Virus record (IMG/VR): IMGVR_UViG_3300050120_000361
Coordinates: 144,539-208,538 of that record
Reading direction: 5' to 3' (one strand)
Length of the DNA stretch: 64,000 bases
The notes under the pieces were generated by a model. It was not told where the DNA came from. It saw only the letters and a program-made list of their open reading frames with translations, and ran no database searches. Below, piece by piece: positions 6,410 to 52,349 of this stretch. Every line of letters starts with the position of its first letter. The first letter of the stretch is position 1. The position numbers and the translations under genes were made by a program.

Positions 6410-9130
6410 ATGGACCCAAGGTTATTAGCAATTGCAGCCAAAGCTGCAGGAACTTACTTTATCGTGACGGACAATTCGCTTGTTCAAACGACTGCAGTAC
6501 CGCCTAACCTACGGATAATTTTTGTGAATGTACCGGCCGGTCCTGTTAATACGGTGGTGGTATTTCAGCAAGGAGACACCGCAGGCCTGGCCTCAATATT
6601 CGGAACCGCTTCCCGCACGCAGGAGAAGAAGGGCAACTACTCACTTAGGACGTGCAACGACGCGCTTGTCGGCGGACCGATAGGAGTGATAAACCTGCGC
6701 GTCTTCGCTTCAGAAGACCTTGTGGGAGTCGCCGGCATATCACCTAACAGCACCTTTTTGGAGGACAAGACCACGGCTTACGCCAACGTCTTCAACACCA
6801 ATGGCTTCTGGACGGCCCAGGCCAAAAACATAGCTCCGCTGATGTCCCGCGCCAACTACCTGAACTTCGCAAACGTCGGAGCTTCGAACGTCAGCATATT
6901 CGTCACCTCGGCAATACCGGCCAACTACCAGTCGCTTACCAGCCAGTACGGCAACACGCTTACGGCTATGAGCCTGAGCGTTGACGACTATCCTGGTTTG
7001 GACATGGGCATCAAGCTGGCCGACACATTCGTTGACGTTTACGTTTTCGCGAACACTTTCGACCCGCAGACGGTTTCAACCAACCGCTACTACGGCCAGC
7101 TGTTCAACAGCGACGGGAGCATCAACTACGAGAACCTCCCTGCCCTTTCGCTCATACCTGAGTCCGGCTTCATACGCACAATCACTGGCTCACTGCTGCC
7201 AAACCTCCTGAGCGAAAGCGCGGCCGATTTGTCAATAGACACGCTGATGAACACGCTGTACCCTCAAACGGGCGTGATAGCGCACATCAATGATGATTTG
7301 CTGGAAACCGATTTGACCGAGCCGCCCGTGCTCAACGTTAACGCCACGGACGTGTACAACGCCGACGGCACGCTTAACCAGCTCACAGGTTCGAGCATCA
7401 GCATACTGTCGCACATGTTCAAGGAAATCGACGGAATGCCTACGGTTGACCTGGATGAGGTTCACGACGCTGACGTTGTGGGCATGAACACCCACCTGTT
7501 GCTTTCGGTTACTGGCACTATCTTCCAGGACGGCCAGGAAAACGGGAACAAGATACTCTCAATCTACGAGCAGGGCACGCGCATTGGCGACGAGATCGTT
7601 TTCGAGGATTTGGACACCGAGGACACCAAAACGGTTGTCGTTACTGGCCTTTCCATCATTGAGCAGAACGTCGCTACGGACCCAATAACGCTTGCGGCCC
7701 TTGCCAAGACCGTACTCACTATACCACAGCCCACAGACACCATTTCAGTTGTGTTGGATTGGACGGCGGTTACGCACGCGGACACTTACAGCGTGTACCG
7801 CAAGAAATCTACCGACTCGGCTTGGGTACTCCTGCAGGGCGCGATTTCAGCGCTTACCTACACTGACACGACTGTTCAGCCTTCATTCACATACCAATAC
7901 TACGTGTTGGCAGTGAACGCCGCGGCGGCCTACGTGTCCAGCATATCAATAGCCAAGCAGATAACCACCATTGCGGTTAACGGCGACCCAACCACAATTG
8001 GCGCTTCAACTGCGTCCAACAACCAACCGGCCGACCTTCCAACAACAATAGCTGGAACAAAGACCTATTCGGTTGCCCTGCTTACCTGCTCTGGACCGGT
8101 TAACGCCGCGTCATACACCCGCAAGAAGCCATTCAAGACAATCGCCGGCATAGCCACCATGCCTTTCGGTCTTGTCGCTTACACGCCGCGTACGGCCCAA
8201 TTCACCGACGGCACCTCGGCCACCCAGTCCGCGATACTCGACGTGATGAACACGCCGGGACTCGTTAAGGGCATAGCCGCTCTCGGCACGGCGCGCTACG
8301 TAGTGGACGCTTTCAAGTCCTTCGTTGAAGGGAGCTACAAGTACCAGTACGGCCAGTTGGCGTACACGCTCGACGCTAAGAACACTTTCGTCCGTAACAT
8401 CATCAACGAGCCGTTCCTGCAGGACCTGCAGAAGTCCACCAACCCGCTGTTCTCGCAAGGGCCTGGCTTCCCATTCGACCCAAGCTACCTCGCGCAGGGC
8501 GGCAATCCGGACTTCTCCACAGTCCTGCTCTCCAAGTTCGGACAAGGCTCTGAGATGAGCTTCTTCTTCGGCTCCGGTAACGTTGACGCTAAGGGCAATG
8601 TGTCTCCGGTTGCGGGAATAGTGTCAAACGTGTTCATTAACAAGCAGTTCCCTTACGACGTTGCTGCCAATGCGAGCGGCTACCTGACAGGCATAACAGG
8701 CCTTGAGGACAGCCCCAACGGTTCCGACGACCGCCTGCCATATGAGCAGTTCCTCTGGAACCCGATAATAGCGCAGAAGGGAAGCTTCACGATATACGGC
8801 AACTTTACCGGCCAGAAAATCAACACCTCCCTTCAGGCCATACACAACTCTGAGCTGCTCGCCTACGTTAAGGGCACCCTGCTAGCGATGACCATTGACG
8901 ACCCGTTCAAGAAGGGCCTGTACAACGAGTACCTCGCAACGCAGACCGAGGTCAACACTTTCATCCAGAGCCTCGTGCTCGCGGGCGCGATACAGCCGAA
9001 CCCTATCGTGATATGCGACGCCACCAACAACACCGTTGACGTGTCAAAGGCTAAAATCAAGCTGATACACGTAGAGTACACCGGCGTTGACTGCCTTGAC
9101 AAGACTGTGTTTGATTTGAACCTGGACTAA
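6410..9130 (+). CDS. contractile tail sheath protein with inserted FN3-like domain
   Basis: C-terminal 'WNPII...FTIYGNFT...SLQAIHNSELL' and 'VICDATNNT..V' typical of gp18 sheaths; FN3-like 'VVLDW...YSVYR...YTDT...YQYYVLAVN' at about 7710-7960. Confidence 0.88.
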   Translation: MDPRLLAIAAKAAGTYFIVTDNSLVQTTAVPPNLRIIFVNVPAGPVNTVVVFQQGDTAGLASIFGTASRTQEKKGNYSLRTCNDALVGGPIGVINLRVFASEDLVGVAGISPNSTFLEDKTTAYANVFNTNGFWTAQAKNIAPLMSRANYLNFANVGASNVSIFVTSAIPANYQSLTSQYGNTLTAMSLSVDDYPGLDMGIKLADTFVDVYVFANTFDPQTVSTNRYYGQLFNSDGSINYENLPALSLIPESGFIRTITGSLLPNLLSESAADLSIDTLMNTLYPQTGVIAHINDDLLETDLTEPPVLNVNATDVYNADGTLNQLTGSSISILSHMFKEIDGMPTVDLDEVHDADVVGMNTHLLLSVTGTIFQDGQENGNKILSIYEQGTRIGDEIVFEDLDTEDTKTVVVTGLSIIEQNVATDPITLAALAKTVLTIPQPTDTISVVLDWTAVTHADTYSVYRKKSTDSAWVLLQGAISALTYTDTTVQPSFTYQYYVLAVNAAAAYVSSISIAKQITTIAVNGDPTTIGASTASNNQPADLPTTIAGTKTYSVALLTCSGPVNAASYTRKKPFKTIAGIATMPFGLVAYTPRTAQFTDGTSATQSAILDVMNTPGLVKGIAALGTARYVVDAFKSFVEGSYKYQYGQLAYTLDAKNTFVRNIINEPFLQDLQKSTNPLFSQGPGFPFDPSYLAQGGNPDFSTVLLSKFGQGSEMSFFFGSGNVDAKGNVSPVAGIVSNVFINKQFPYDVAANASGYLTGITGLEDSPNGSDDRLPYEQFLWNPIIAQKGSFTIYGNFTGQKINTSLQAIHNSELLAYVKGTLLAMTIDDPFKKGLYNEYLATQTEVNTFIQSLVLAGAIQPNPIVICDATNNTVDVSKAKIKLIHVEYTGVDCLDKTVFDLNLD

Positions 9131-19550: not shown

Positions 19551-22500
19551 ATGAAATCAGCCGCCCTTGAGCAACCAACGCAAGTAGACATGGGCTTCTC
19601 GTCCATGGTTAACATGCTTGCTCAAATGGGCAAGGAGGAGAGGCAGCAGAGCGGAGTGCTTGGTTCAATACTTGAACGCGCCACGGAAATCAAGGTTTCC
19701 GTAACGGATGCGTTCAAGTCTTTCTCATTCGACAGGACTCAAAAATTCAACGTTTACCAAAACATTCAGACAGCCCAGCACAAGACAAACAACTGGCTTG
19801 AGGCGCTCTTCATAGAATTGCTTTCGATACGCAAGCACGTCGTTGGCATAGAGTCCGGACAGGAGGGCATGAAGCCCAAGGCAGAAAAGATGCAGAGCGG
19901 CAGACCCCTCGACTACACCGAAACCTTCAAGAAATCAAACGACCATCTCTCGGCAATATCCGCAAACACCAAGTCAGCGCTCAAATTCCTTGAGGGAATA
20001 GCCAATGGCAAAAAGGTCGAGGCTCCCAAGGCCGGACACAAGGTTGGGGAGGAAGAGGATGAGGGCTTCCACGACACCAAAAAGAAGGTGAAGGGTTTCT
20101 TCAATGTGGCCGAGTTCGCCAAATCAATTGCGATACTGAACGCGAACATAACCAAGAAAATGATAAGCGGGCTCGGAGCGTTCGAAAAGGCCTACGCGAG
20201 CCTTCTGGAAATGCCTGAAAAGAAGATGAAGACATTCACTGATGGGACTACCAAGTTCGGTTCAGTAATGGAGAAACTCTCCAAACAGATAAAGCCCGCC
20301 GCGATAACAATAGGCGTGCTTTCCGCTGCGTTTGTAGCTTTGAGCCTGTCTGTGACCAATCCGATATTCATTGTCGGTATGGCAACAATAGGCCTGTTCG
20401 TCACGCTCGTAAAAAGGTACGGCGGCGACAAGGACGCGGACAGGGGAATGCTGAAATTCGCTGAAGGCATAGGGATACTAACGCTTGCAATGGGCCTGAT
20501 GCGCTTTGTGCAATGGGAGTCCGGTGCCAAGATGCTGGTATTCATTGCTGGACTCGGTCTGGCTATGAAGCTCTACATGAAACCCGCGGAGACTTCGGGA
20601 ATGTTCAAGTTCGCGATGGGTATAGGCATCCTTACGGTTGCCATGGCCCTGATGAATTTCGTGGACTGGTCCTCAGGGGCCAAGATGCTGATATTCATTG
20701 GCGGTCTCGGACTGGCTTTGCGGACCTTCAGCGGTTCCGGCGCGAACGGCGGGCTCGGCAAGCAGTTGCTAGCTTTCGGTGAGGGGCTCGGCATAATGGT
20801 TCTCGCGCTCGTTGCTTTCAACTACATAAACTTCACTTCGGTCCTGAAGATGATAACCTTCGTGGCGGGGCTCGGACTCGCCCTCAAGCTGTTCGGAGAA
20901 GACAAGGGCGGCCTAAAATCCCCACTGCTCTCGTTTGCGTTCGGCATTGGATTGATGGTTCTTGGGCTGCTCGCGTTCGCTGAGATACCGCTCACGGCCA
21001 TAATGAAGATGCTTACGTTCATTGGCCTATTGGGCCTTGAGCTCAAGCTTTTCTCCAACGGGGACGGCAAGTCGCCGATGCTTCAATTCGCAATGGGTTT
21101 GGGCATAATGGTTCTCGCCATGTATGCCATGAATGAGCTTCCGTGGGAGGCTCTCGGAAAGACTTTGCTGTTCCTGGGCGGTCTCGGACTGGTTATGAAG
21201 CTGTTCGAAGGCGGCTCGGGCGCCGATTTCCTTATGATGGCAGGCGGCATACTGGTAATAGCCGGAGCCCTTTGGGTCTTCAAGAAGATAGGCTGGACCA
21301 TGGCGGACGCCCTGATACTTGGCGGCACGATAACCATACTCGGAGTGATAGTGGCCGCTGCAGGAGCCCTAGCTGAGGTGATAGTCCCTGGAGCCATTTC
21401 AATGGTGGCTATGGGTGTTTCACTCGCGCTGTTCGCGCTCAGCCTGTGGGCAATATCCAAGCTTACGATAGACTACGAGTCTATAGCCAAATTCGGGGTG
21501 GCCGCTCTCGGCCTTACCACGATGATGGCCCTGATAGCTCCGCTAGCCGCTTTGGGCGCGATAGGCGCTGTCCTGTTCCTGCCGATAGCCGCCGCAGCCC
21601 TTCTGGGTGCCGGCTCACTTATGCTAATATCCAAAGTACGGAATTATGATACGAAAAACTTTGCAGACGCGGTATTCGACCTCACATGGGGCTTTACCAA
21701 AATTGCTCCATTCGCTGCTCTTGGTGTCATTGGGGCTACTCTTTTTCTACCAATTGCAGCAAGCGCTCTCCTTGGAGCGGCAGCGCTCAAAGCAATATCG
21801 CTACTCGCTTTCGACCAAAAGGCAATCACAGCCTACGGGGTTGGCGTCAACTCACTGATCGGAGCCCTGGACAACCTGGGCATAATACAGGTCACTCGGA
21901 CCGCGGCCAAGTCGGTGCTGCTGCTGCCAATATTCGCCGCGGCGACATTGGGAGCGCTCGCGCTTAAGGCAATGTCTGAAATGGACCTGAATGAGGGAAA
22001 GGTGAACCTGGCGGCCAAGCTAATAGACAGCTTCTCATCATCGATGATTTACACCATACTCAGGAACAAGGACAGGTTCGAGAAGGCGATGCCGGGAATA
22101 AACGCATTGGCCAAGCTTATGGGAATATCCTCGGACGTCGCCAAGGCGATAGGCATGATGGCCAACATGGAGTTCGTTGAGCATGGGGTCAGGAACGGGA
22201 AGCTGTACATCAAGTCCGTGCGCAAGCTGAACCCCGCGGACATGAAGCGGGTGGGGGAGAACCTGGCCGTAATGCTCCAATGCCTTATCGAGCCTTTGAC
22301 CATTCTCGGCTCTGACACGGCAACGTTCAACATAGGCGGCAGGAAGATAGCCAACCCGTTCAAGAACCCAAGCGCGCTAAAGGGGATAGACATGCTGTCC
22401 AGGGTTGGCGGTGCTTTCAAGCCATTAATGGACTCAATATCCGAGTACGCGAACCTGCCGCTCGCGTCAGACCCTAAGAAGCTTCAGCTGTTCACACAAA

Positions 22501-23165
22501 GTCTGATGTCGGTCATAAATACCATTATATGGGCGATAGACCGCGCGGCTACGATTAAGCAGGACATAGCTTCCAAGTCCATAACAACAATATCCAGGTT
22601 CGTAAGCTCAATGAAGGACCTTAACGTGGACAGGTTCAACGGCATAAACTCTGCGGTTGAGAAGTTCCTTGGCAACCTTGCGGATGACGTCAAGTGGAAG
22701 AAGATAGCCAGCAACATGAACATGCTCCAGCAGCAGTTCAAGGGTATAGCGTCCTCGATAAACTCCATAGACATGGGCAAGGCCACAATGTTCGAGAAGA
22801 ACGTGCGCAACCTGCTGGACAAGAACGCAGGCGAGAACCTCACCCTTGTGGTTCAGGAGCTCAAGGAGTTGTTCGGACTTGTTTCGGGGCAGTACAAGGC
22901 CCAGGCCGATGCTGCCCAGGCGCCAGCCAGAGACGACAAGAAGGACAATTCAATATCCTTCGGCTTCAACAACGGCCCACAGGACAAGAAGGCCGCTAAG
23001 GCCGTAGGGAAGCCCACTGAGCACGAGGAGATGACAGAGCTTATGAACCAAATAGGGATGGCGCTCGCGGCCATAGTTCAGCAGCTGACCGGCGTCAACG
23101 ACAAACTCGCTGGCAAGTTGAAGGTTGTGACCACAACTGGAACGGCCAACAGCTTTTTACCGTAA
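19551..23165 (+). CDS. tape measure protein
   Basis: 1204 aa, helical, central hydrophobic ~52-aa repeats ('M.KFA.G.GI...AM......W.S..KML.FI.GLGLA.K.F'); downstream of tube and chaperone genes. Confidence 0.8.
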   Translation: MKSAALEQPTQVDMGFSSMVNMLAQMGKEERQQSGVLGSILERATEIKVSVTDAFKSFSFDRTQKFNVYQNIQTAQHKTNNWLEALFIELLSIRKHVVGIESGQEGMKPKAEKMQSGRPLDYTETFKKSNDHLSAISANTKSALKFLEGIANGKKVEAPKAGHKVGEEEDEGFHDTKKKVKGFFNVAEFAKSIAILNANITKKMISGLGAFEKAYASLLEMPEKKMKTFTDGTTKFGSVMEKLSKQIKPAAITIGVLSAAFVALSLSVTNPIFIVGMATIGLFVTLVKRYGGDKDADRGMLKFAEGIGILTLAMGLMRFVQWESGAKMLVFIAGLGLAMKLYMKPAETSGMFKFAMGIGILTVAMALMNFVDWSSGAKMLIFIGGLGLALRTFSGSGANGGLGKQLLAFGEGLGIMVLALVAFNYINFTSVLKMITFVAGLGLALKLFGEDKGGLKSPLLSFAFGIGLMVLGLLAFAEIPLTAIMKMLTFIGLLGLELKLFSNGDGKSPMLQFAMGLGIMVLAMYAMNELPWEALGKTLLFLGGLGLVMKLFEGGSGADFLMMAGGILVIAGALWVFKKIGWTMADALILGGTITILGVIVAAAGALAEVIVPGAISMVAMGVSLALFALSLWAISKLTIDYESIAKFGVAALGLTTMMALIAPLAALGAIGAVLFLPIAAAALLGAGSLMLISKVRNYDTKNFADAVFDLTWGFTKIAPFAALGVIGATLFLPIAASALLGAAALKAISLLAFDQKAITAYGVGVNSLIGALDNLGIIQVTRTAAKSVLLLPIFAAATLGALALKAMSEMDLNEGKVNLAAKLIDSFSSSMIYTILRNKDRFEKAMPGINALAKLMGISSDVAKAIGMMANMEFVEHGVRNGKLYIKSVRKLNPADMKRVGENLAVMLQCLIEPLTILGSDTATFNIGGRKIANPFKNPSALKGIDMLSRVGGAFKPLMDSISEYANLPLASDPKKLQLFTQSLMSVINTIIWAIDRAATIKQDIASKSITTISRFVSSMKDLNVDRFNGINSAVEKFLGNLADDVKWKKIASNMNMLQQQFKGIASSINSIDMGKATMFEKNVRNLLDKNAGENLTLVVQELKELFGLVSGQYKAQADAAQAPARDDKKDNSISFGFNNGPQDKKAAKAVGKPTEHEEMTELMNQIGMALAAIVQQLTGVNDKLAGKLKVVTTTGTANSFLP

Positions 23166-23177
23166 CACTGTCGCGGG

Positions 23178-23420
23178 GTAAATACAATCAAGGGTATCGC
23201 AAAATGCCAATATATCAAGTTAAAATGAACAAAGCCATGTAAGCATGACGTACCTTGCCACAAGCGAATAGCAGTCAGTTGTAGCTACCTGTTGCATATC
23301 GTATTTGGGCATAAGTTCGAGGAATAGAGACGGCCTGTAAGCCATTGAACCTGGGAACGAGAAGTCATCATTGGAGTGCGTGCATTACTGCAGTTATTAA
23401 CAATTTAACCCATTAACCAA
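23178..23420 (+). ncRNA. candidate structured RNA / long 5' leader
   Basis: One of the longest + strand gaps; starts at a GTAAATA promoter-like motif; several nested stems (GGTAT/ATGCC, CATG/CATG, GCAGTCAG/CTGTTGC, GTTCGA/TTGAAC, GGC/GCC). Confidence 0.35.
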
Positions 23421-24914
23421 ATGGCAATTACAAGAAAAGACTACGTCCTCAAAGTGACGGAGCAAATGGCCGAGAACGCTAAGGCGGTTCTTTCCGGACA
23501 CGGACTGAAATCGCAGTTCATCAACCTTATTAGCAAGCGCCCGGACATCATCGCCAAATTGGCCGTGTTGGCCTGGTCATCAAAGACCGCGTCTAAAGGC
23601 GGCAAGGCTCTTCAGAAGAAGAACAACTTCAAAATCACGGCTTACGCCAACTTCGCGAACTTCAACTTCGGCGCGCGCCAGGACGTTGAAAAATTCATGG
23701 AGAAACTCACGCCGGCCGACCAGGCTTCATTCAGCAATGATGAGAACATTTTGACCATTCTCGCAATGGGCGACACCCCTGTGGGCATTGATTTGGAGGC
23801 GGACATCGTTAACGGCAAATCCGTTGCGCTGCCTTTCGCCAAGTCTGTTATGAAACAGTACAAATTCGGTACTGGGGCTTACATCGTGGTTATGTTCGGC
23901 GACTCTTGGCTCCAGCCAAAAGAGGAGAAAACGGCGAAATCAAAAGCAAAGGTTAACAGCCGCCTACAGGCCCGCCGTTCACCCGCCAAGGTTCGCGCCG
24001 AACTCGTTAGCAAGGCGAACGCCAAAAAGGCCGATTTGAAGAGCGATGCCATCAAATTGAAGAACGCCGCCGCCAAGCACGAAGGCGCCCTGCAGCAGTT
24101 CAACAACCTCGCGGCAACTGTTGGCGCTCCTGAAGGCGCCTCAGCAAAAGAGGCATTGGCAGCAATCAAGGCCTACAACACGACAAACAAGAAATTGATT
24201 GCCGGTCTGAGCTCTGACAATCTTCGCCAATACAACAAGGCTGCACGCCTCTACATGGGCGGCGAGAAAGCGAAAGCCAATTCGATACTTGCGAAAATCG
24301 GCATTCCCGAGCTTACTGACCTGGTTCGCGGCGGAAACAACGTAAGCACAGACAAAATCGTTGCTGCCCGCAAGAAGGCATTGACCGCCAAAATCAAGGA
24401 AATTAGCGCCGCAAATGAGGAGCTGCTTGTTAAGGTTGCTGAGTCAACCAACAGCAAGTACAAGGCGGACACCAACTTCAAGATCCGTGCCAATGTGGCA
24501 AAGATTAAGGAGCTTCGCGCGCGCATTGCATCTTTCAGCGAATTGACAACAATCGGCGCCGTTAAGAACAAGGCTTCATTGCTCTCTAAGGCGAACGCGC
24601 TTATTGCTGCTAATTTGAAGGCCGGACAGTCTGTGCAGGCAGCGCTGCAGAACGCGCTTTCTAAACTTCCGGTTGACGACGACACTAAGGAGCAGATACG
24701 CCAGCAGGTCATTGAGGGCGTTGCCCAGCAAGTGCCCATGCAGTACGCGGTCCAGCAGGCGATACAGAACGTTGACCTACAGGCCGACGATGAGGTGGAA
24801 GCGGCCGAGGAGGAAATGGAAGATGATTTGGGATTGGATGACGATCTTGAACTGTCTGACGACACCTCACTGGCAGGCAGCAAGTCTATTCAGGACATTC
24901 TTGCAAACCTCTAA
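23421..24914 (+). CDS. Lys/Ala-rich basic protein with acidic C-tail, probably highly expressed (putative nucleic-acid binding)
   Basis: Capsid-like codon bias (ATC/ATT, CGC rather than ATA/AGG); tail 'EEEMEDDLGLDDDL...IQDILANL'. Confidence 0.7.
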   Translation: MAITRKDYVLKVTEQMAENAKAVLSGHGLKSQFINLISKRPDIIAKLAVLAWSSKTASKGGKALQKKNNFKITAYANFANFNFGARQDVEKFMEKLTPADQASFSNDENILTILAMGDTPVGIDLEADIVNGKSVALPFAKSVMKQYKFGTGAYIVVMFGDSWLQPKEEKTAKSKAKVNSRLQARRSPAKVRAELVSKANAKKADLKSDAIKLKNAAAKHEGALQQFNNLAATVGAPEGASAKEALAAIKAYNTTNKKLIAGLSSDNLRQYNKAARLYMGGEKAKANSILAKIGIPELTDLVRGGNNVSTDKIVAARKKALTAKIKEISAANEELLVKVAESTNSKYKADTNFKIRANVAKIKELRARIASFSELTTIGAVKNKASLLSKANALIAANLKAGQSVQAALQNALSKLPVDDDTKEQIRQQVIEGVAQQVPMQYAVQQAIQNVDLQADDEVEAAEEEMEDDLGLDDDLELSDDTSLAGSKSIQDILANL

Positions 24915-24944
24915 CGGCATTAAATTGGTTTAGTTTAATTAGTT

Positions 24945-24992
24945 CCAGCATTCAGAATGCCCCGTCGCCGAAAGGTGTCGGGGCTTTGCTGG
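24945..24992 (+). terminator. long GAAA-tetraloop stem-loop
   Basis: CCAGCA..GCCCCGTCGCC-GAAA-GGTGTCGGGGC..TGCTGG; no classical U-tract. Confidence 0.55.
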
Positions 24993-29403: not shown

Positions 29404-30936
29404 ATGCTGATAGACTACACCCAAAAGAAGGATAGCATTGAAATCTCCTACGTCAATGAGGCTAAGAACATTGTGGTGGAGAACCTCCCGCTCAAGAAGG
29501 GCTATTACAGGTACGTGGCCTGTGAGGATTGGGACAGGGACAGGATTGAGGGGCTTCGCTCATTCAAGGCTAACAGCGCCATAAAGAGGGAGCCGGCCAA
29601 GTACTTCCAGAACCACAACATAAACGAGTTCTTCACAAGGGACCTGCGCGACGACTACCCAGAGGTGTACGAGCGCACCTCGCAGCTGAACGTTCCGAAC
29701 CCGTACTCGGTCGACATAGAGACGGAGATAACCGACAAGTACGGGTACTCCACGCCGGAACGGGCCGAAAACCGCATACTGTCCATAGCCATAACCGACA
29801 TCAACCTTAACTCCATACTCTTCATACTCAAGAACCCGAACCAGCCGACATTCGGCGAAAGCGACAGGCTTGAGATAAGGGGGGTTATAATGAACGCGCT
29901 CGGCGCGAGCTTCGCCAACAAGTACGACTACGAGTTCGACATTAGGGTGTTCGACACGGAGGGGGAGATGCTCAGCGTATTCGCGGAGTGCGTCAACAAG
30001 TACTTCCACAGCATGATAGGCTGGAACATTGAGCTTTTCGATTGGGTTTGGATAATCAACAGGATGGAGAAGAACGGAATAGACCTGCGCAAGATGTCGC
30101 CAACCTTTAGGAAGATAACCAAGCGCTTCAAGCGCAAGGACGGAACAGAGGTGAAGGTAGACTTTCCGGCGCACAGGCCGGTCATAGACTATATGGACCA
30201 GTTCAAGGGAAGTCTCATCTACAACAACCTCGGCTCCTACTCGCTGGACTTCGTTTCAGAGCTGATACTCAAGCTGAAGAAGGTGATGTACGACGGCAAC
30301 CTGCGCAAGCTGTACAACGAGCAGTACAACAGGTTCTGCGGTTACGCCTTCATGGACACCATACTCGTTATGCTGAACCACAAGGCCACCAACCTATACA
30401 ACGTGGACTTCTTCGAGTCTTACTTCAACAACATACCGTACGCGAAGATAAGCCAGAACGCCATATCCGAAGCACTCGTTTACAATGAGCTGCGCCCAGA
30501 GGGGATATTCCTTCTCTCGTCCGAATTCAATACGCCAGTGAAGCGCAAGTACAAGGGCGGTTACGTGAAGACGCCTACAAAGAAGCAGATACTCGCCGGG
30601 GCGGGGCTCGACTTCAGCGGGCTCTACCCGAACAGCATGATTTCCATGTACCTGTCCCCGGACGGAAAGGTGGACTCCATAGAGATAGACGAGGACACGT
30701 GGGAGCCGCTCAACGACCGAGAGATGCAGAAGTGGCTGAAGTACAAGGAAATGGGCTACACGCTGACTCCAATGGGCAGGATATACGACGGCACCACCGA
30801 CAAGCTCTTCGTGCGCATTGAGAAGAAGCTCATAGCCCAGCGCAAGATATTCAAGGGGCACGCCGAGGACATCTACCTGAACATAACTCCCAAGCTCGAG
30901 AAGCTCATAGCCAAGAAGAAATTGGAACTCGCATAA
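29404..30936 (+). CDS. DNA polymerase family B, N-terminal subunit (3'-5' exonuclease + motif A)
   Basis: ExoI 'SVDIETE', ExoII 'GWNIELFDW', ExoIII 'YAFMDT', 'YKGGYVK', motif A 'DFSGLYPNSM'; ends after the first fingers helix. Confidence 0.92.
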   Translation: MLIDYTQKKDSIEISYVNEAKNIVVENLPLKKGYYRYVACEDWDRDRIEGLRSFKANSAIKREPAKYFQNHNINEFFTRDLRDDYPEVYERTSQLNVPNPYSVDIETEITDKYGYSTPERAENRILSIAITDINLNSILFILKNPNQPTFGESDRLEIRGVIMNALGASFANKYDYEFDIRVFDTEGEMLSVFAECVNKYFHSMIGWNIELFDWVWIINRMEKNGIDLRKMSPTFRKITKRFKRKDGTEVKVDFPAHRPVIDYMDQFKGSLIYNNLGSYSLDFVSELILKLKKVMYDGNLRKLYNEQYNRFCGYAFMDTILVMLNHKATNLYNVDFFESYFNNIPYAKISQNAISEALVYNELRPEGIFLLSSEFNTPVKRKYKGGYVKTPTKKQILAGAGLDFSGLYPNSMISMYLSPDGKVDSIEIDEDTWEPLNDREMQKWLKYKEMGYTLTPMGRIYDGTTDKLFVRIEKKLIAQRKIFKGHAEDIYLNITPKLEKLIAKKKLELA

Positions 30937-30975: not shown

Positions 30976-31839
30976 ATGTCACAGGAACAGACAACACCAG
31001 AACAAACAGCAGGAGCGCAGCCAGCGGCTCCGGAACAGACATCAAACATCCAGGAAAGCGTAGACAAGACCTTCCAGCAAATGGGCGCAGTTACCGACGA
31101 CGTGCTCGGCACGGCGGAGGCCGACATAGCGTCGCAGAACCAACAGCCTCCTGCGCCGGAACCAGCCGCAGAGAATGCCGCTGCGGAACCAACGCCTGAG
31201 CCAGCTTCGGAAACTATAACTGAGCCTGCTCCTGAGCCAGCACCGGAAACTATAACTGAGCCTGCGCCTGCACCGGAACCAGCGCCTGAAACTATAACTG
31301 AGCCTGCGCCTGAAACTATAACTGAGCCAGCGCCTGAAACTATAACTGAGCCTGCGCCTGAGCCTGAAACCCAGCCAGGTGATGACGCAAACGACTTAGG
31401 CGGAGACAATTCGGGTAATGAAGCCGGTGAAGACGTTGATGCCGACACCGACCCGGGCAGTTCAAATACGGCCGCTCCTGAAACCAACCTTCCGCCCGCC
31501 ACAACAGGAGACGAAGATGAAGACCAAACCCGAGACGAAAGCCTTATCGAGCGCGCAGAGGATTGGGTTGAGGACAAGTTCGAAAAGCTTAAGGAGGAAG
31601 GCGAGGAGTTCTACGCGAAGGTTAAGGCAATCGTGGAAGAAAACCACTTCTTCTCTAATCTGTCATGCGGCGCCTGGTTCAAGAAGGCAGAGATAACCGT
31701 TGAGGACCTTCTCGGCTTCCACAAGGAATTCTCAGCCGAGGGCGCGCAGAACGAGAACCATCAAATACTCCTTGACACAATAGCTACCAAAGCCCCTGCG
31801 CCTGACGCCGAGACTGAAGAGGACGACGCCACCAAATAA
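30976..31839 (+). CDS. acidic Pro/Glu/Ala/Thr-rich repeat protein
   Basis: PAPETITE repeats; predicted largely disordered. Confidence 0.75.
   Translation: MSQEQTTPEQTAGAQPAAPEQTSNIQESVDKTFQQMGAVTDDVLGTAEADIASQNQQPPAPEPAAENAAAEPTPEPASETITEPAPEPAPETITEPAPAPEPAPETITEPAPETITEPAPETITEPAPEPETQPGDDANDLGGDNSGNEAGEDVDADTDPGSSNTAAPETNLPPATTGDEDEDQTRDESLIERAEDWVEDKFEKLKEEGEEFYAKVKAIVEENHFFSNLSCGAWFKKAEITVEDLLGFHKEFSAEGAQNENHQILLDTIATKAPAPDAETEEDDATK
31195..31370 (+). repeat. coding tandem repeat (core GAAACTATAACTGAGCC, five copies)
   Basis: Repeated units of 24-42 bp encoding (PAPE)nTITE. Confidence 0.85.
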
Positions 31840-31927: not shown

Positions 31928-32905
31928 ATGGATAACAATAACATAATAATAAAGAACTTCAACCTCTCGCAATTCTCAAGGCTTCTCAACCAGTCCCTGC
32001 AGGTTACAAACCAGATAATGATGGAGTTCCGCGACGGCCTTCTCAAGTCCTGCTCGTTCTCTTCAACCAAGTCATTCGTCAAGCTTTGGACCATACCCAT
32101 GGAGACGCTGATAGTGGTGGACGAGGCCCAGAAGGAGATGTTCGACGTTGAGGCCGCCAAGCGTGAATTCGCCGAACTGAACTTCAACTTCTACATACTC
32201 AAGGGGGACCTTTTCAAGAAGTTCATAAGCGTGCACAATCAGGAGAACGTTGACATAGAGTTCACGATAGCAATAGTGGAGGGCAAGAAGCAGGCGAGCT
32301 CCCTGACAATATCGGGAAAGAGCGAGCAGGGCTCGGCGCTTAAGACTACTTTCATCCTGACCACGGAGGAGCTAATACTAAACAAGGTGTCCGACTATCA
32401 GTCGATACTCCAGCAGTGCTCCCCAGACCCCGACATGATGGAGATAATGTTCGTTGACGAGCAGATACAGGAGATAAAGGGCCTCATACGCAAGCTGCAC
32501 AAATCGGTGAGCGACAACTCCAAGTACCTAACATTCACTGTGGACCACAAGTGCATTCGCGTAAATGACAAGGTTTTCAATGTGGAGTACCCGCTAAACA
32601 AGGAAATGATTGAGAAGAACACCATTAAGGGCAAGCTGCTCAGGGAGGGTGAGACTCTTTCATTCAATATACTGAAGGGCGACTTCATCATAACAGGCGA
32701 CCACACCTTCAACTTCTTCACATCCCACGACAGCGAGAAGGTAATAATACTCGGCAAGTACGGCAAGGCGATAATCCTGTGCCTGACAACAAAGGTCAGC
32801 GAGACACGCGACAGTTTGTCCTCCGCATCCGACGACATGCTCGGCGATTTGGACCTGAACGAGTACGGCTTCGATATACTCGAGGACAACCAGAGCTACG
32901 CCTGA
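31928..32905 (+). CDS. probable DNA sliding clamp (gp45/PCNA-like)
   Basis: Two-repeat beta-alpha-beta pattern, about 300 aa, acidic tail, located between the two polymerase halves. Confidence 0.5.
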   Translation: MDNNNIIIKNFNLSQFSRLLNQSLQVTNQIMMEFRDGLLKSCSFSSTKSFVKLWTIPMETLIVVDEAQKEMFDVEAAKREFAELNFNFYILKGDLFKKFISVHNQENVDIEFTIAIVEGKKQASSLTISGKSEQGSALKTTFILTTEELILNKVSDYQSILQQCSPDPDMMEIMFVDEQIQEIKGLIRKLHKSVSDNSKYLTFTVDHKCIRVNDKVFNVEYPLNKEMIEKNTIKGKLLREGETLSFNILKGDFIITGDHTFNFFTSHDSEKVIILGKYGKAIILCLTTKVSETRDSLSSASDDMLGDLDLNEYGFDILEDNQSYA

Positions 32906-32947: not shown

Positions 32948-34219
32948 ATGTCGCAAAACCAATTCTCACAAAGATACCTTGAACTCAAAAAACTCACAGA
33001 TGATGATGAATACCTCGACAGGCTGAGCGTTGACGAGCTTACCAAACTGTTGGCCGAAACGGAGGCCACCAGACAAGAGTACAAGAACTTGGAGCTTATA
33101 GTGAAGCGTGACGCGAACTCGCTCTACGGCACTGCGGCTTCCATATACTTCTCCTTGGGTGACTTCGACCTGGCAGAGGACATCACAACGGTTGGGAGCT
33201 GGCACTACACCCGCCTTGTGGACAGGGCCATAAACAACTTCTTCAAGGCCTGGGGCGAAGAGGAGCTCGCGAAGGTTCAGGAATTCTACCCGCAGGTAAG
33301 CGAGCTTAAGAGGTTCACCCAATACGTGCCTGACAGCGTGAACGACATATGCGTCTACGGCGACACGGACTCGAGGTACATGGACATAGGCATGGTTTAC
33401 CAGCTTATGGGTATTGAGCTCCCCAGGTACGATGCCGAAGGCGACAGGGAACTTTCGGATTTTGTGCTGTTCCTGATGGATAATTTCATAAACGCCCTGA
33501 TAAAGAAAACCATAGGCGACGACATAGATAAGCGGAACGGAAATCCGGGCTATTTGAAGATGACGCACGAACGTACCACGAGAAAGGGCGTTTTCCAGGC
33601 CAAAAAGAAATACGTGCTCGCTGACATATACAAGGACGGTAAGTTCCTTGACAAGCCGACCCTTAAGGAGGTTGGCGTCGAGCTGCGTAAGGGCGAGCTC
33701 AATGGAAGAATAAAGAAAATCATACGCACATTAATTGAGAAGTTCATGCTCAAGGGCTATGATGTGGTCATGCTCCGCAACGAAACGGTGAAGATAATCG
33801 ACTACATCAAGATGCGCAAGGAGAAGGACTGCATCTACAGGATAACGGCTGTCAGCGGCCTGCAGGGCGTAGTCAAAAACGAGAAGAACGTTTGGGTGTG
33901 CCCGAACAAGAGCCATTTCCAGATTAAGGTGGCCCTCTCCTGGTACAACTTCGTAGAGAAGAACAACCTGTGGGACGAGTACAAGCCGCCTTTCGAGGGC
34001 CAGAAGATGAACTTCTACTACGGCAGGGACGCGCAGGTGATAGCTGTTCCGGACGATATAGACATAACTAAGGTTCCTTTCCTGCCCGAACCGGACTGGA
34101 ACCTAATGCTAAACGCGATTTTAATCAAACCGCTCCTAAGATACATATACGAGGACAAAAAAGTGTCCGTGGAGGACATAGAGAATTTCCTACTCAACAT
34201 AAAGCAATTGAAATTTTAA
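32948..34219 (+). CDS. DNA polymerase family B, C-terminal subunit (motifs B, C, thumb)
   Basis: Motif B 'KRDANSLYG', motif C 'YGDTDS', 'KKKY', 'VGVELRKGE'. Confidence 0.92.
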   Translation: MSQNQFSQRYLELKKLTDDDEYLDRLSVDELTKLLAETEATRQEYKNLELIVKRDANSLYGTAASIYFSLGDFDLAEDITTVGSWHYTRLVDRAINNFFKAWGEEELAKVQEFYPQVSELKRFTQYVPDSVNDICVYGDTDSRYMDIGMVYQLMGIELPRYDAEGDRELSDFVLFLMDNFINALIKKTIGDDIDKRNGNPGYLKMTHERTTRKGVFQAKKKYVLADIYKDGKFLDKPTLKEVGVELRKGELNGRIKKIIRTLIEKFMLKGYDVVMLRNETVKIIDYIKMRKEKDCIYRITAVSGLQGVVKNEKNVWVCPNKSHFQIKVALSWYNFVEKNNLWDEYKPPFEGQKMNFYYGRDAQVIAVPDDIDITKVPFLPEPDWNLMLNAILIKPLLRYIYEDKKVSVEDIENFLLNIKQLKF

Positions 34220-40494: not shown

Positions 40495-41025
40495 ATGAAA
40501 ATAGCCAAAAAATCAGGAAATGTCGTACTGACCCACCTGACGCAGAATGAGGTTTACGGACTGCTTAAGTGCCAGATACCAATTCACCTTATATTCATGG
40601 ACCTTAACGGCACCTTCGTGCAGGAGAAGACCATGAGCCTTTCAGACAGGTTGTTCGATGGCGTTCAAAAGATACTCGTCAACGAAGAGGAGTGGGAGTA
40701 CAAGGCGCTTATCGCGGAAATAGGCCAGGTAATGCACTCGGGCCTGAGCCTCGGAGTGATGCTGACAATACAGGACTTCAAGGACCACGAACCGCTCATA
40801 TCCATTGTTGGCTCATTGAAGCAAGACGTGGTCAATTCCGCAGTGCGCATAGAGTACGGCAAGGAGGTGTTCTGCGTGACCAACAGGCCGTTCGCCAACG
40901 GAGACTCCGATAAACTTTTTTATTACGCGGGCAACGACAGCATACTCGCCTTTGTCGAGGAGGGGCCTGTGCTCATAACCGACAACGTGCACGTCACTTC
41001 CGTTCAGGACGTGCTGTGCGATTAG
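40495..41025 (+). CDS. hypothetical protein
   Basis: ORF in operon with A-rich leader. Confidence 0.6.
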   Translation: MKIAKKSGNVVLTHLTQNEVYGLLKCQIPIHLIFMDLNGTFVQEKTMSLSDRLFDGVQKILVNEEEWEYKALIAEIGQVMHSGLSLGVMLTIQDFKDHEPLISIVGSLKQDVVNSAVRIEYGKEVFCVTNRPFANGDSDKLFYYAGNDSILAFVEEGPVLITDNVHVTSVQDVLCD

Positions 41026-45197: not shown

Positions 45198-46838
45198 ATG
45201 GCCAACACCTCCGACAAGGTGAACACGCACAAGCTCGGCAAGGGCGTGCCTTCTGACCCTATATACTTCTCCAACTCCAGTAGGGCGCAGTACTTCAACA
45301 ACGACATACGCTACCGCAGCAATTACGGGTACTCCCCGCTCACATCTATAGACGGGCGTAACGCCCTTCTGCTCTTCGCGGAGAACACTGAGATAAAGAA
45401 GGCCGTGAAGGCCATATGCAACGAGCTCATAGTCGCGTCTTTGCGCGACAAGAAATACGCCCTGTACCCGGTGATAAATCTCACCAACGTACTTGAGGAA
45501 AAGCTAGATACCGCCAAGGCTATCCAGTCCTACCTTGACGAAATATTCTATCCTAAGCTTTACCAGATGGTAGGCTTCAAAAAGGATGGATTGATGGAGA
45601 TTTGCAAGGAGTTTTTGATAACTGGCAAATGGGCTGGTGAGATTGTTTACGACTCGCTCAAGAACCCCAAGGAGATTGTCAACATAGTGCCGATTGACCC
45701 ATCCACCCTGCAGAAGTTCAAGCAGGACAACTACGTGTACTACGTACAAAGGCCCATGGGCGACAGCGTGCGCGAGCGGATACTGCATGAGAATCAGGTG
45801 ATACTCGTGGAATGGAACAAGTTCGATTTCGGCTACATCTCATACGTTGACCAGCTGCGCAGGCCGTTCAATATAATGCGCTCCATGCAGACCGCCAAGA
45901 TACTCTGGTTTGCCGTTAAGTCTCAGGTCCGCATGCACATCAAATTGAACCTCGGAGACGTTTCGCGCCAGGACGCCATACAGAAGCTGAGCGTGGCCAA
46001 GAACGACTACACCAACACCTTTGACTTCAATGACGAGGACGGTACGGTTAAGTTCAACGGGGAGCCGAACTCTTCAGGCTATCAGGAGTTCTTCACAGCT
46101 GAGACCGCCGCCTCAGGCTCACCAGAGATTGAGGAGATAAACACCCAGGGCCCGGATTTGACAGAGGTCGACTCGCTCCAGTACTGGGAAAAATCCTACT
46201 GGAAAGAGACCGAGATACCATTCGACCGCATAGACCCGAACAGCTCCGAGGTATTCAACTTTGTGGACGTCACGAACATGCGCAAAATCGAGATAAACTT
46301 CAGCAAGTTCGTGACCGGCATACGCAAGATGCTTCAGGAGATAATTCTCAAGCCGATACTAATACAGCTGACTATCAAAGAAATTGAGATAGGCATAGAC
46401 TTGAACCTGCTCGACAGCATACTAATCGAGTGGGTGGCCTTCAATGAGTACGACAAGCTCGCCGAGACCGAGCTTCTGCAGAAGAAGGTCGAAATGGTCA
46501 CGGCTCTCGCGCAGTTCGGCGTTCAGACCGACGCTTCAGGCGTAGAGAGGAACTACCTGCCACTCAGCTGGCTTGTCGACAACTACCTGGACTTCACCCC
46601 TGAGCAGAAGGTTGCCATGGAGGTCGCGCGCAGGCAGGAGGCCATAGCGCTTGGCTTCACAGACAAGGACGGAAACCCAATACCTCACGGGGACGACGCG
46701 CCGGACGAGAGCGACGACGGCGGCGGCGGCGAAATGGACATGAACGAGGACCCTGACGATGACGGCCTGGCGGACGAGGACGAAGACGAGAGCGCCGAGG
46801 ACATAGCCGGCGTTGACGACGATGGATTTAACGCTTGA
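45198..46838 (+). CDS. portal protein (T4 gp20-like)
   Basis: 'EIKKAV..I.NE.IV', 'ISYVD.L.RPFN.MR.M', 'IPFDR', 'EI.FSKFV..IR', 'F.EY.KL.E.ELL.KK'; acidic tail. Confidence 0.9.
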   Translation: MANTSDKVNTHKLGKGVPSDPIYFSNSSRAQYFNNDIRYRSNYGYSPLTSIDGRNALLLFAENTEIKKAVKAICNELIVASLRDKKYALYPVINLTNVLEEKLDTAKAIQSYLDEIFYPKLYQMVGFKKDGLMEICKEFLITGKWAGEIVYDSLKNPKEIVNIVPIDPSTLQKFKQDNYVYYVQRPMGDSVRERILHENQVILVEWNKFDFGYISYVDQLRRPFNIMRSMQTAKILWFAVKSQVRMHIKLNLGDVSRQDAIQKLSVAKNDYTNTFDFNDEDGTVKFNGEPNSSGYQEFFTAETAASGSPEIEEINTQGPDLTEVDSLQYWEKSYWKETEIPFDRIDPNSSEVFNFVDVTNMRKIEINFSKFVTGIRKMLQEIILKPILIQLTIKEIEIGIDLNLLDSILIEWVAFNEYDKLAETELLQKKVEMVTALAQFGVQTDASGVERNYLPLSWLVDNYLDFTPEQKVAMEVARRQEAIALGFTDKDGNPIPHGDDAPDESDDGGGGEMDMNEDPDDDGLADEDEDESAEDIAGVDDDGFNA

Positions 46839-52322: not shown

Positions 52323-52349
52323 CATATCATACAAAACAAATATGATATG
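52323..52349 (+). promoter_or_regulatory. hairpin sequestering the HNH start codon
   Basis: CATATCATA-N9-TATGATATG, 9-bp perfect stem including ATG 52347. Confidence 0.6.

What the first reader, a model, noticed from the sequence alone, without database searches (positions are those of the whole stretch)
23166..24992. Structured ~250-nt leader on an apparently highly expressed basic protein with a gp32-like acidic tail
Seen: an unusually long gap in a compact genome, starting at GTAAATA and containing several stems. The following 497-aa protein is Lys/Ala-rich, has capsid-like codon bias, ends 'DDDL...IQDILANL', and is closed by a long GAAA hairpin. Established: T4 gp32 has a similar acidic tail and autoregulates through a structured leader, but I see no sequence similarity to gp32. 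Inference: an abundant nucleoid- or RNA-binding protein with a cis-regulatory RNA, or a ribonucleoprotein pair.
Basis: partly seen in the sequence, partly recalled or inferred. Interest (0 to 1): 0.6.

Follow-up and report, generated by a model that had tools for sequence, protein, structure and literature searches.

The report
New structured leader RNA, phage gene
The long gap before this highly expressed orphan gene of an uncultured T4-like jumbo phage from peat holds a folded RNA of about 140 nt that about 20 distant relatives keep; it is laid out like phage T4's self-regulating gene 32 leader, yet neither the RNA nor the protein matches any described family.

Summary
There is a 255-nt gap (5th longest of 228; median 22 nt), then a 497-aa Lys/Ala-rich ORF with capsid-like codon use and an acidic tail, then a strong GAAA hairpin.

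The leader is real and conserved. Every homologous locus that reaches the upstream gene (25 metagenomic contigs; protein identity down to 30%) keeps a 123-255-nt gap. About 20 share one RNA architecture: an outer helix, a 5-bp helix P1, and a three-way junction with near-invariant GUAC / RAG / GAGAA strands. One arm is capped by a self-complementary (palindromic) loop and the other is a variable hairpin. A 40-52-nt A/U-rich tract of UUAA(C)-type repeats follows, up to the AUG. Covariation is strong: 88-90% of cells paired against 57-59% in shuffles, and P1 is 99% paired. The motif is single-copy in the genome, has no Rfam match and holds no conserved small ORF.

The protein has no Pfam, PHROG, NCBIfam, PDB or fold match and no OB fold, so it is not a gp32 homologue. 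Its C-terminal tip (IQDILANL) does resemble T4 gp32's (LDDLLNDL) and that of the phage's own SSB candidate.

Best reading: a new cis-acting operator for feedback translational control, analogous to T4 gene 32. Binding is inferred, not shown.

The parts
23178..23184 (+). GTAAATA, a late-promoter-like motif (T4 late consensus TATAAATA); the putative start of the roughly 230-nt leader
   Evidence: [G/T]TAAATA lies 27-40 nt before several other ORFs of this genome, including TATAAATA before the prohead protease gene. TATAAATA-like motifs precede the RNA domain in most homologous loci. Function is inferred.
23235..23374 (+). Conserved structured RNA domain: helices P0 and P1 closing a three-way junction
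   Evidence: Covariance model R2 hits 23235-23378 at 57.9 bits. It is the only hit in the 208-kb genome. The same topology appears in 19 constrained folds. Covariation is shown.
23235..23249 (+). 5' strands of P0 (CCAUG, 23235-23239) and P1 (AUGAC, 23245-23249), separated by the internal loop UAAGC
   Evidence: They pair with 23369-23374 (CAUUGG) and 23364-23368 (GUCAU). P1 is 98.8-98.9% paired across loci and all 5 of its pairs show changes on both sides.
23250..23253 (+). Junction strand J1/2, GUAC, near-invariant
   Evidence: These columns are invariant in alignment A8.
23256..23311 (+). Long arm. P2 pairs 23256-23259 with 23308-23311; P3 pairs 23261-23267 with 23299-23307; P4 pairs 23271-23278 with 23289-23295
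   Evidence: P2 covaries, with 84-87% of cells paired and all 5 pairs changed on both sides. P3 and P4 come from constrained folds.
23279..23288 (+). Apical loop UUGUAGCUAC holding the 8-nt self-complementary sequence GUAGCUAC (23281-23288)
   Evidence: 12 of 14 non-redundant loops hold a perfect palindrome of 6 nt or more, in 9 different sequences, against 1.9 loops expected from shuffles.
23312..23363 (+). J2/5 (UAAG), the variable hairpin arm P5, and junction strand J5/1, GAGAA (23359-23363)
   Evidence: P5 is a hairpin in 18 of 19 folded loci, with unrelated sequences and often a GNRA loop. G, A, A, A of GAGAA are invariant.
23379..23420 (+). A/U-rich linker up to the AUG. It ends in three 8-nt units, UUAACAAU UUAACCCA UUAACCAA (23397-23420). 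ACUGCAGU (23387-23394) and GUUAUUAAC (23393-23401) occupy the position of the UUGUACAA / UUGUUAACAA element of relatives
   Evidence: The distance from P1 to the AUG is 30-52 nt in all 21 loci, 40-52 nt in 19 of them. Three TTAAC within 37 nt occurs only here in the 208-kb genome. The last 35 nt of the linker is 71-91% A+U in all loci.
23421..24914 (+). ORF of 497 aa (P0001). It has an N-terminal alpha/beta domain (1-165), a basic helical domain (about 170-452), an acidic disordered tail (453-489) and a conserved C-terminal helix, SIQDILANL
   Evidence: The family has 88 cluster representatives, all metagenomic.
24945..24992 (+). Terminator-like hairpin with a GAAA tetraloop (core 24960-24983)
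   Evidence: z = -3.66. All but one of the 21 homologous loci have a strong hairpin right after the gene, most with a U-run; L029 has only a weaker one set further downstream.

Best explanation
The gap is the 5' untranslated leader of a monocistronic, probably late and highly expressed mRNA. It carries a previously undescribed cis-acting RNA element.

Shown: a domain of about 140 nt folds into a closing helix (P0/P1) and a three-way junction with near-invariant junction strands (GUAC, RAG, GAGAA). One arm ends in a self-complementary loop; the other is a variable hairpin. At a fixed distance, 40-52 nt in 19 of 21 loci, an A/U-rich tract of UUAA(C)-type repeats runs into the start codon.

Inferred: the element is a translational operator. 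When the encoded basic protein is in excess over its normal ligand, it recognises the folded domain and spreads or docks over the adjacent A/U-rich tract. This blocks 30S binding at the AUG, so the protein limits its own synthesis. The logic is that of T4 gene 32, where a pseudoknot nucleation site sits next to UUAAA repeats. The acidic tail with its gp32-like tip would modulate nucleic-acid binding and recruit partners. The palindromic loop may let two leaders pair, or may present a symmetric site to a dimeric protein.
For: The gap is kept (123-255 nt) in all 25 homologous loci that reach the upstream gene. The RNA topology recurs in 19 constrained folds. On a MAFFT-only alignment, 88.4% of cells are paired against 57.3% in shuffles, 0 of 500 shuffles reach the observed value, and sliding the partners gives 33-54%. 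On the model-fitted alignment the figures are 90.3% against 58.8%. P1 was also found by RNAalifold on a plain alignment and P2 likewise. 17 G-U cells make the + strand fit better, 90.3% against 85.2%. The model finds loci outside its seed (L020 at E 6e-7, L022 at 0.005). It finds nothing else in 185-204 kb of related DNA at E of 0.01 or less, or in the rest of the genome at E of 1 or less. The spacing to the AUG is constrained and the linker is A/U-rich with UUAA repeats. There is no conserved ORF in the leader. A terminator hairpin is conserved after the gene. The tail tip IQDILANL compares with T4 gp32's LDDLLNDL. The T4 operator layout is taken from PMC535899.
Against: No experiment or RNA-seq shows that the leader is transcribed or bound; no RNA run holds this phage. 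The whole leader is not thermodynamically more stable than shuffles (z = +1.76). Predicted pairing of the linker (0.45) is only modestly below that of the domain (0.59). The protein shows no recognisable RNA- or DNA-binding fold; the best structural Z is 4.3. UUAA-rich tracts are expected by chance in the AT-rich relatives, so the repeat argument rests mainly on the GC-richer loci. The most distant homologue examined (L031, 30% identity) has a shorter leader of 123 nt without the recognisable motif. Promoter identity is by motif only.
Confidence: 0.42

Rival explanations
1. The domain is a cis-acting mRNA stabiliser and/or translation enhancer with no feedback by the product. A stable structure at the 5' end protects the late mRNA from 5'-end-dependent decay. 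The A/U-rich repeats recruit ribosomal protein S1 and the 30S subunit in a host that lacks Shine-Dalgarno use.
For: The structured domain starts within a few to about 25 nt of the promoter-like motif in most loci. No Shine-Dalgarno sequence precedes the AUG, and the linker is 71-91% A+U. The gene looks highly expressed. The major capsid protein's relatives are phages of Bacteroidota and Sphingomonas.
Against: Simple hairpins suffice for protection. Near-invariant junction nucleotides, a loop that stays palindromic while its sequence changes and strict 1:1 linkage to one gene family point to a specific ligand. Other putative late genes of this genome have leaders of only 27-40 nt.
Confidence: 0.25
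2. The leader, or a processed piece of it, is a functional RNA in its own right. It homodimerises through the palindromic apical loop by a kissing or extended duplex and assembles with the downstream-encoded protein into a ribonucleoprotein. This would be loosely comparable to the retroviral DIS or to phi29 pRNA.
For: 12 of 14 loops hold palindromes of 6-10 nt in 9 different sequences, and the centre tetramers are also self-complementary. A second self-complementary element (AAUUGUACAAUU, AUUGUUAACAAU, UUAAUCGAUUAA) lies in the linker. There is a three-way-junction core. RNA and gene always co-occur.
Against: No terminator or processing signal lies between the RNA and the ORF. The spacing to the AUG is constrained, which an independent RNA would not need. 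In the window itself the second element is not a perfect palindrome at the homologous position. Dimerisation is untested.
Confidence: 0.15
3. The domain is a riboswitch or a self-cleaving ribozyme of a new class, sensing a metabolite or cutting the leader.
For: A three-way junction with highly conserved unpaired junction nucleotides and variable peripheral helices is typical of such RNAs.
Against: No Rfam family matches, even at E up to 10 on the leader. The junction strands do not fit the hammerhead core, judging by my own knowledge of its CUGAUGA/GAAA consensus. No expression platform, either a terminator or sequestration of the AUG, is conserved. Metabolite control would be unusual for a late structural-module phage gene.
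Confidence: 0.08
4. The conserved palindromes act at the DNA level, as an operator for a dimeric DNA-binding protein, a replication origin or a cruciform, and the RNA fold is incidental.
For: Perfect, spacer-less palindromes are the usual form of sites for dimeric DNA-binding proteins. P4 plus its loop is an almost continuous inverted repeat.
Against: The long-range helices P0, P1 and P2, about 50-130 nt apart, covary and include G-U pairs that read as A-C mismatches on the other strand. The UUGUACAA element occurs essentially only here within each locus, so it is not a general promoter or operator. The elements lie 60-200 nt downstream of the promoter-like motif.
Confidence: 0.07

Closest known systems
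Phage T4 gene 32 translational operator and gp32 (autogenous repression)
   Same: Both have a two-part leader: a folded 5' element followed by an A/U-rich tract of more than 40 nt, little structured, with UUAA(A)-type repeats that reaches the start codon (PMC535899). Both genes are stand-alone and strongly expressed. Both products have an acidic C-terminal tail with the tip pattern hydrophobic-x-D-[IL]-L-x-x-L at the C-terminus: LDDLLNDL against IQDILANL.
   Different: The RNA here is a three-way-junction domain of about 140 nt, not a 28-nt H-type pseudoknot. The protein has no OB fold or zinc site and no sequence similarity. The phage has a separate gp32-like SSB candidate. Binding is not shown.
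Ribosomal-protein leaders and other autogenous operators (L1, S8, S15, T4 gp43, RegA; P22 scaffolding protein feedback) - from established knowledge
   Same: A structured RNA sits directly upstream of the gene whose abundant product must be matched to a ligand or an assembly. RNA and gene are linked 1:1.
   Different: No mimicry target is known here. The protein family is an orphan and the RNA matches no Rfam leader family.
Retroviral dimerisation initiation site (HIV-1 DIS; GCGCGC or GUGCAC loops) - from established knowledge
   Same: The apical hairpin loop carries a self-complementary 6-8-mer whose sequence varies between lineages while staying palindromic.
   Different: Here the element sits inside a three-way-junction domain of a phage mRNA leader. 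No evidence of dimerisation or packaging exists, and at 8 of 10 loop nucleotides the palindrome is long for a simple kissing complex.
phi29 prohead RNA (pRNA) - from established knowledge
   Same: A phage-encoded RNA with a three-way-junction core and loops suited to intermolecular pairing.
   Different: pRNA is a separate early transcript that forms rings through two different complementary loops and binds the connector. Here the RNA is continuous with an ORF, has one self-complementary loop and does not match the pRNA Rfam family.

Membership tests
T4 gp32 / PF08804 single-stranded DNA-binding protein | Sequence match to the gp32 family | tested here: not met
   No Pfam, PHROG or NCBIfam hit for the ORF. 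PF08804 finds nothing in the genome. No PDB sequence hit.
T4 gp32 / PF08804 single-stranded DNA-binding protein | OB-fold core with a zinc-binding subdomain | tested here: not met
   The AlphaFold models (pLDDT 84 for the whole protein, 94.7 for the N-domain) show an alpha/beta N-domain plus helical bundles with no OB barrel. Fold searches give no SSB.
T4 gp32 / PF08804 single-stranded DNA-binding protein | Acidic C-terminal tail with a hydrophobic tip used for partner binding | tested here: met
   The tail has charge -16 and ends IQDILANL. T4 gp32 ends LDDLLNDL. The tip is conserved across the family. Partner binding itself was not tested.
T4 gene 32-type autogenous translational operator | Folded 5' nucleation element followed by an unstructured A/U-rich repeat tract that covers the ribosome-binding site | tested here: met
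   The structured domain ends 40-52 nt before the AUG in 19 of 21 loci. The linker is 71-91% A+U with UUAA(C) repeats. The layout is as described for T4 and RB69 in PMC535899.
T4 gene 32-type autogenous translational operator | The folded element is an H-type pseudoknot | tested here: not met
   The covariation-supported fold is a three-way junction. A candidate GUAC:GUAC pseudoknot is not conserved in the GC-rich group.
T4 gene 32-type autogenous translational operator | The gene product binds the leader and represses its own translation | not testable with these tools
   This needs EMSA, toeprinting or reporter assays.
Any Rfam 15 family (riboswitches, ribozymes, leaders, pRNA, phage RNAs) | Covariance-model match at the gathering score | tested here: not met
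   No hit in the window. On the leader at E up to 10 there is only a chance snoRNA match on the other strand. No hit in 16 related loci.
Kissing-loop / DIS-type RNA dimerisation element | Self-complementary sequence exposed in an apical hairpin loop and kept palindromic through sequence change | tested here: met
   12 of 14 loops against 1.9 expected, with 9 distinct palindromes.
Kissing-loop / DIS-type RNA dimerisation element | The RNA forms homodimers through that loop | not testable with these tools
   This needs native gels or SEC with loop mutants.
Rho-independent terminator (downstream hairpin) | GC-rich stem-loop followed by a U-run | tested here: inconclusive
   The window has a strong stem (z = -3.66) but only a UUU run, and it failed the simple scan. 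Most homologous loci have a canonical hairpin plus U-run at the same place.

The most novel reading that the evidence does not exclude
The leader is more than a passive operator. It is a new class of self-associating phage RNA whose palindromic apical loop, and perhaps the palindromic UUGUACAA-type element, pair two or more copies. This builds a ribonucleoprotein with the abundant basic protein encoded next to it, a late-infection RNA-protein assembly with its own function. That function might be organising or condensing DNA or recruiting replisome and packaging factors through the gp32-like tail, with translational feedback as a by-product.
Probability: 0.15. Interest if true: 0.85.

Novelty: new variant of a known kind. 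Interest (0 to 1): 0.62.

Why it matters
If the reading is right, this is a second, independently evolved case of the gene 32 solution: a folded nucleation site plus an A/U-repeat tract controlling an abundant tailed nucleic-acid-binding protein. It is built from an unrelated RNA fold and an unrelated protein fold.

It also provides three usable things:
- a well-supported new RNA motif (about 20 diverse examples, strong covariation) for Rfam-type curation;
- a handle on an orphan protein family of 88 clusters that appears to be among the most expressed genes of a clade of uncultured PAU/Tenacibaculum-like jumbo phages;
- a natural example of a hairpin loop that stays palindromic while its sequence changes, which is directly testable for RNA dimerisation.

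The shared C-terminal tip on the target, the SSB candidate and the FEN-like nuclease points to a docking hub in these phages' DNA metabolism.

Tried and rejected
- **Thermodynamic support for the leader.** The MFE is no better than shuffles (z = +1.76), so the case rests on covariation only.
- **Known RNA families.** Rfam gave nothing at gathering score or at E up to 10.
- **Protein identity.** There were no hits from Pfam, PHROGs or NCBIfam, PDB sequences, tblastn against 50,697 phage genomes, Foldseek PDB on the full model and the N-domain, VIA-align wide (best Z 4.3), BFVD or the ESM Atlas. Weak, repeated papain-like and methylase-C-domain rows (Z 2.5-4.3) were not taken as evidence, and the family has no conserved Cys or His.
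- **Small ORF in the leader.** Rejected. No ORF is shared; AUGUAA or AUGUGA start-stop sits in the 5' loop in only some loci, 8 of 20 by eye.
- **Second palindrome as a general promoter or operator.** Rejected. In most loci it occurs only in the leader, and in the others the extra copies are few.
- **GUAC (J1/2) pairing with UUGUACAA as a pseudoknot.** Rejected. The GC-rich group has UUGUUAACAA instead.
- **Downstream ORFs (222, 341 and 274 aa) as a T4-like 45/44/62 clamp and loader set.** Rejected. They have no Walker A motif and their sequences look beta-rich and fibre-like.
- **First covariance model.** R1, built from AT-rich loci only, missed the GC-richer loci and was replaced by R2.
- **Cultured relatives.** PAU and PTm1 lack the protein family and the synteny.
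- **Expression data.** Only peat and soil DNA runs hold the sequence.
- **Complex prediction.** Not run, because no specific partner could be named.
- **Third covariance model.** Not built. P4 and P5 were judged from per-sequence constrained folds instead.
Full report
**Setting.** The window is the last 64 kb of a complete 208,538-bp virus genome with direct terminal repeats. The DNA occurs in peat metagenomes, and no RNA run holds it.

The window carries these recognisable genes:
- a T4-type portal (45198-46838);
- an S77 prohead protease;
- a tail sheath (6410-9130);
- neck and tail proteins;
- a family-B DNA polymerase split into two ORFs.

The major capsid protein (50368-52242) is 32% identical to gp156 of Sphingomonas phage PAU. 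It is more distantly related to Tenacibaculum, Chryseobacterium and Lak phages. This is therefore an uncultured, very divergent T4-like jumbo phage. The target gene sits between the tail module and the polymerase region.

**The observation.** All points check out.
- The gap 23166-23420 is 255 nt, the 5th longest of 228 gaps, against a median of 22 nt.
- GTAAATA lies at 23178-23184.
- The ORF 23421-24914 encodes 497 aa, with about twice the genome's share of Lys and Ala. It has a +23.5 middle region and a -16 tail, and ends ...SIQDILANL.
- Scored for similarity to capsid and sheath codon use, it ranks 5th of 229 ORFs.
- Downstream, a hairpin with a GAAA loop (24945-24992) is far more stable than shuffles, z = -3.66.

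**Relatives.** The word search found five homologues. The family scans left the protein open, so I ran the exhaustive profile search. It found 88 cluster representatives, nearly all 420-530 aa and all unnamed. I fetched DNA for 32 loci.

In each of the 25 loci that reach the upstream gene, the gene follows a large ORF of roughly 1,100-1,270 aa where that ORF is complete. The gap between them is 123-255 nt. All but one of the 21 loci examined have a strong hairpin right after the gene, usually with a U-run. Most leaders begin with a TATAAATA-like motif, the T4 late-promoter consensus.

In this genome, [G/T]TAAATA lies 27-40 nt before several other ORFs, including the prohead protease gene. The unit is therefore promoter-like motif, long leader, ORF, terminator. 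The leader is exceptional among the putative late genes. The promoter assignment is an inference from the motif.

**The RNA.** Plain alignment of the leaders showed conserved blocks. RNAalifold on MAFFT alignments picked out a 5-bp long-range helix, P1, in which every pair has compensatory changes. It also found a second helix, P2.

I forced only P1 and kept the conserved junction strands and the loop palindrome unpaired. All 19 folded loci then gave the same topology:
- an outer helix P0;
- a 5'-side internal loop, often UGUAAG;
- P1;
- junction strand GUAC;
- an arm made of P2, P3 and P4 with an apical loop;
- junction strand RAG;
- a variable hairpin P5, often with a GNRA loop;
- junction strand GAGAA;
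- the 3' strands of P1 and P0.

A covariance model built from 16 loci (R2) recovers all seed loci. It also recovers four loci outside the seed: L010 and L012, which are near-copies of seeds, L020 (E 6e-7) and L022 (E 0.005). At E of 0.01 or less it finds nothing else in 185-204 kb of related DNA or in the rest of this genome.

Pair counts support the structure:
- On the MAFFT-only alignment, 88.4% of cells are paired against 57.3% in shuffles (0 of 500 shuffles reach the observed value), and sliding the partners gives 33-54%.
- On the model-fitted alignment the figures are 90.3% against 58.8%, with P1 98.9% paired.
- All 13 pairs tested show changes on both sides.
- 17 G-U cells make the + strand fit better than the - strand, 90.3% against 85.2%.

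The shuffle control does not correct for relatedness. The slide control and the number of distinct pair types per column (up to six) make a phylogenetic artefact unlikely. P3, P4 and P5 rest on per-sequence folds only.

The whole leader is not thermodynamically unusual (z = +1.76). No Rfam family matches. No ORF is conserved in the leader. The most distant locus examined (L031, 30% protein identity) has a 123-nt leader with hairpins but no recognisable motif. L029 keeps the architecture with altered junction strands.

**Two unusual features.**

First, the P4 apical loop is self-complementary. I found GUAGCUAC here, and GUCGCGAC, GACGCGUC, AACGCGUU, GUUGCAAC, ACUUGCAAGU, GUCGAC, UGUCGACA and UACCGGUA elsewhere. 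That is 12 of 14 non-redundant loops with a palindrome of 6 nt or more, against 1.9 expected. Even the central tetramers stay palindromic, which a simple hairpin does not require. This suggests pairing in trans or a symmetric ligand.

Second, the domain is followed by an A/U-rich linker running to the AUG. The distance from P1 to the AUG is 40-52 nt in 19 of 21 loci, with 30 and 35 nt in the other two. The last 35 nt of the linker are 71-91% A+U even in the loci with about 50% GC.

In the window the linker ends in three abutting 8-nt units, UUAACAAU UUAACCCA UUAACCAA, directly before the AUG. This is the only cluster of three TTAAC in the genome. Relatives show similar UUAA/UAAA units with a period of about 8 nt. 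These start with a conserved element, UUGUACAA(UU) or UUGUUAACAA(U), that is often a perfect 10-12-nt palindrome. In most loci it occurs only in the leader.

**The protein.** AlphaFold gives a confident model (pLDDT 84; N-domain alone 94.7) with four parts:
- an alpha/beta domain (1-165);
- a long basic helical region;
- a disordered acidic segment;
- a short terminal helix.

No sequence or fold search gave a significant match. It is not a gp32 homologue and has no OB fold.

A better SSB candidate exists, a 426-aa ORF at genome 95479-96759. It lies next to the helicase, as the annotated SSB does in Tenacibaculum phage PTm1, and is weakly similar to that SSB (E 7e-4).

The tail tip is nevertheless conserved across the family as [IL]-x-[DE]-[IL]-[IL]-x-x-[LI] at the C-terminus. 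T4 gp32 ends LDDLLNDL. Three further ORFs of this phage end with a similar tip:
- the SSB candidate (VEDILNS);
- a FEN/RNase H-like 5'-3' exonuclease (FIDDILNA);
- a 176-aa ORF (VQDVLCD).

This points to a common docking partner in DNA metabolism.

**Mechanism.** The T4 gene 32 operator has two parts: a folded 5' element that nucleates gp32, and an adjacent tract of more than 40 nt, little structured, with UUAAA/UAAA repeats. This tract contains the ribosome-binding site, and gp32 spreads over it cooperatively (PMC535899; review PMC3014915, seen in the listing but not read).

The leader here has the same two-part plan, a constrained spacing to the AUG, and a product with a basic body and a gp32-type tail. 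I therefore favour autogenous translational repression (0.42). Every binding step is inferred.

The rivals are:
- a pure stabiliser or translation enhancer (0.25);
- a self-associating RNA that forms an RNP with the protein (0.15);
- a new riboswitch or ribozyme (0.08);
- DNA-level palindromic sites (0.07).

That the leader is a genuine, conserved, structured RNA element specific to this gene I hold at about 0.9.

Noticed in passing
window 24888-24911; genome G000:C1:95479-96759 (-) and 81729-83036 (-); window 40495-41025 and 31928-32905: Four of 229 ORFs end with the tip [DEQ]-D-[IV]-L-x-x. They are the target (IQDILANL), a gp32-like SSB candidate (VEDILNS), a FEN/T4-RNase-H-like 5'-3' exonuclease (FIDDILNA) and a 176-aa ORF (VQDVLCD). 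A 325-aa ORF between the polymerase halves has GFDILEDN near its end. T4 gp32 ends LDDLLNDL. This looks like a shared short docking motif for one hub protein.
   Followed up: partly
genome G000:C1:95479-96759 (-), outside the window: A 426-aa ORF lies next to the helicase, in the same position as the annotated SSB of Tenacibaculum phage PTm1, and is weakly similar to it (22% identity over 197 columns, E 7e-4). A relative (L038) has IKFLPN, close to the IRFLPS of T4 gp32. It is probably the phage's true SSB, although Pfam's gp32 model does not see it.
   Followed up: partly
window 29404-30936 and 32948-34219: The family-B DNA polymerase is split into an exonuclease-half ORF and a polymerase-half ORF, with two ORFs between them. 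One is a very acidic 287-aa protein with EPAPE/TITEPAPE repeats (30976-31839). The other is a 325-aa protein whose N-terminal sequence style recalls a sliding clamp (31928-32905).
   Followed up: no
window 52347-53291: An HNH homing-endonuclease-like ORF lies in a low-GC island (GC 0.37 against about 0.52) directly after the major capsid gene. It is probably a mobile insertion.
   Followed up: no
window 23237-23242 and the homologous position in L010, L013, L014, L016, L018, L019, L022: The conserved 5' internal loop reads AUGUAA or AUGUGA, a minimal start-stop ORF, in about 8 of 20 loci but not in the rest. It is probably structural rather than translated.
   Followed up: partly
window 23166-23234: The window's leader has about 50 nt between the GTAAATA motif and the conserved domain that the relatives lack. 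Their domains start within a few to about 25 nt of the promoter-like motif. Its role is unknown.
   Followed up: no
window 24735-24770 (residues 439-450): The motif PMQYAVQQAIQN, just before the acidic tail, is the most conserved stretch of the whole protein family: P-M-Q-Y-A-V-Q-Q-A-x-Q-N is invariant down to 37% identity. Its function is unknown.
   Followed up: no
window 19551-23165 and homologous loci: The upstream neighbour is always a large ORF, about 1,100-1,270 aa where complete. Its C-terminal third is weakly similar to PAU gp97 and to a PTm1 protein annotated 'ubiquitin-like proteins'. Synteny with the target is conserved in the uncultured clade but not in PAU or PTm1, which lack the target family.
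   Followed up: partly
genome-wide, e.g. window 47069, 38805; G000 122311, 124853: [G/T]TAAATA motifs lie 27-40 nt upstream of several ORFs, including a 3,041-aa giant ORF and the prohead protease gene. This is consistent with a T4-like late promoter in a phage where no gp55 homologue was looked for.
   Followed up: partly
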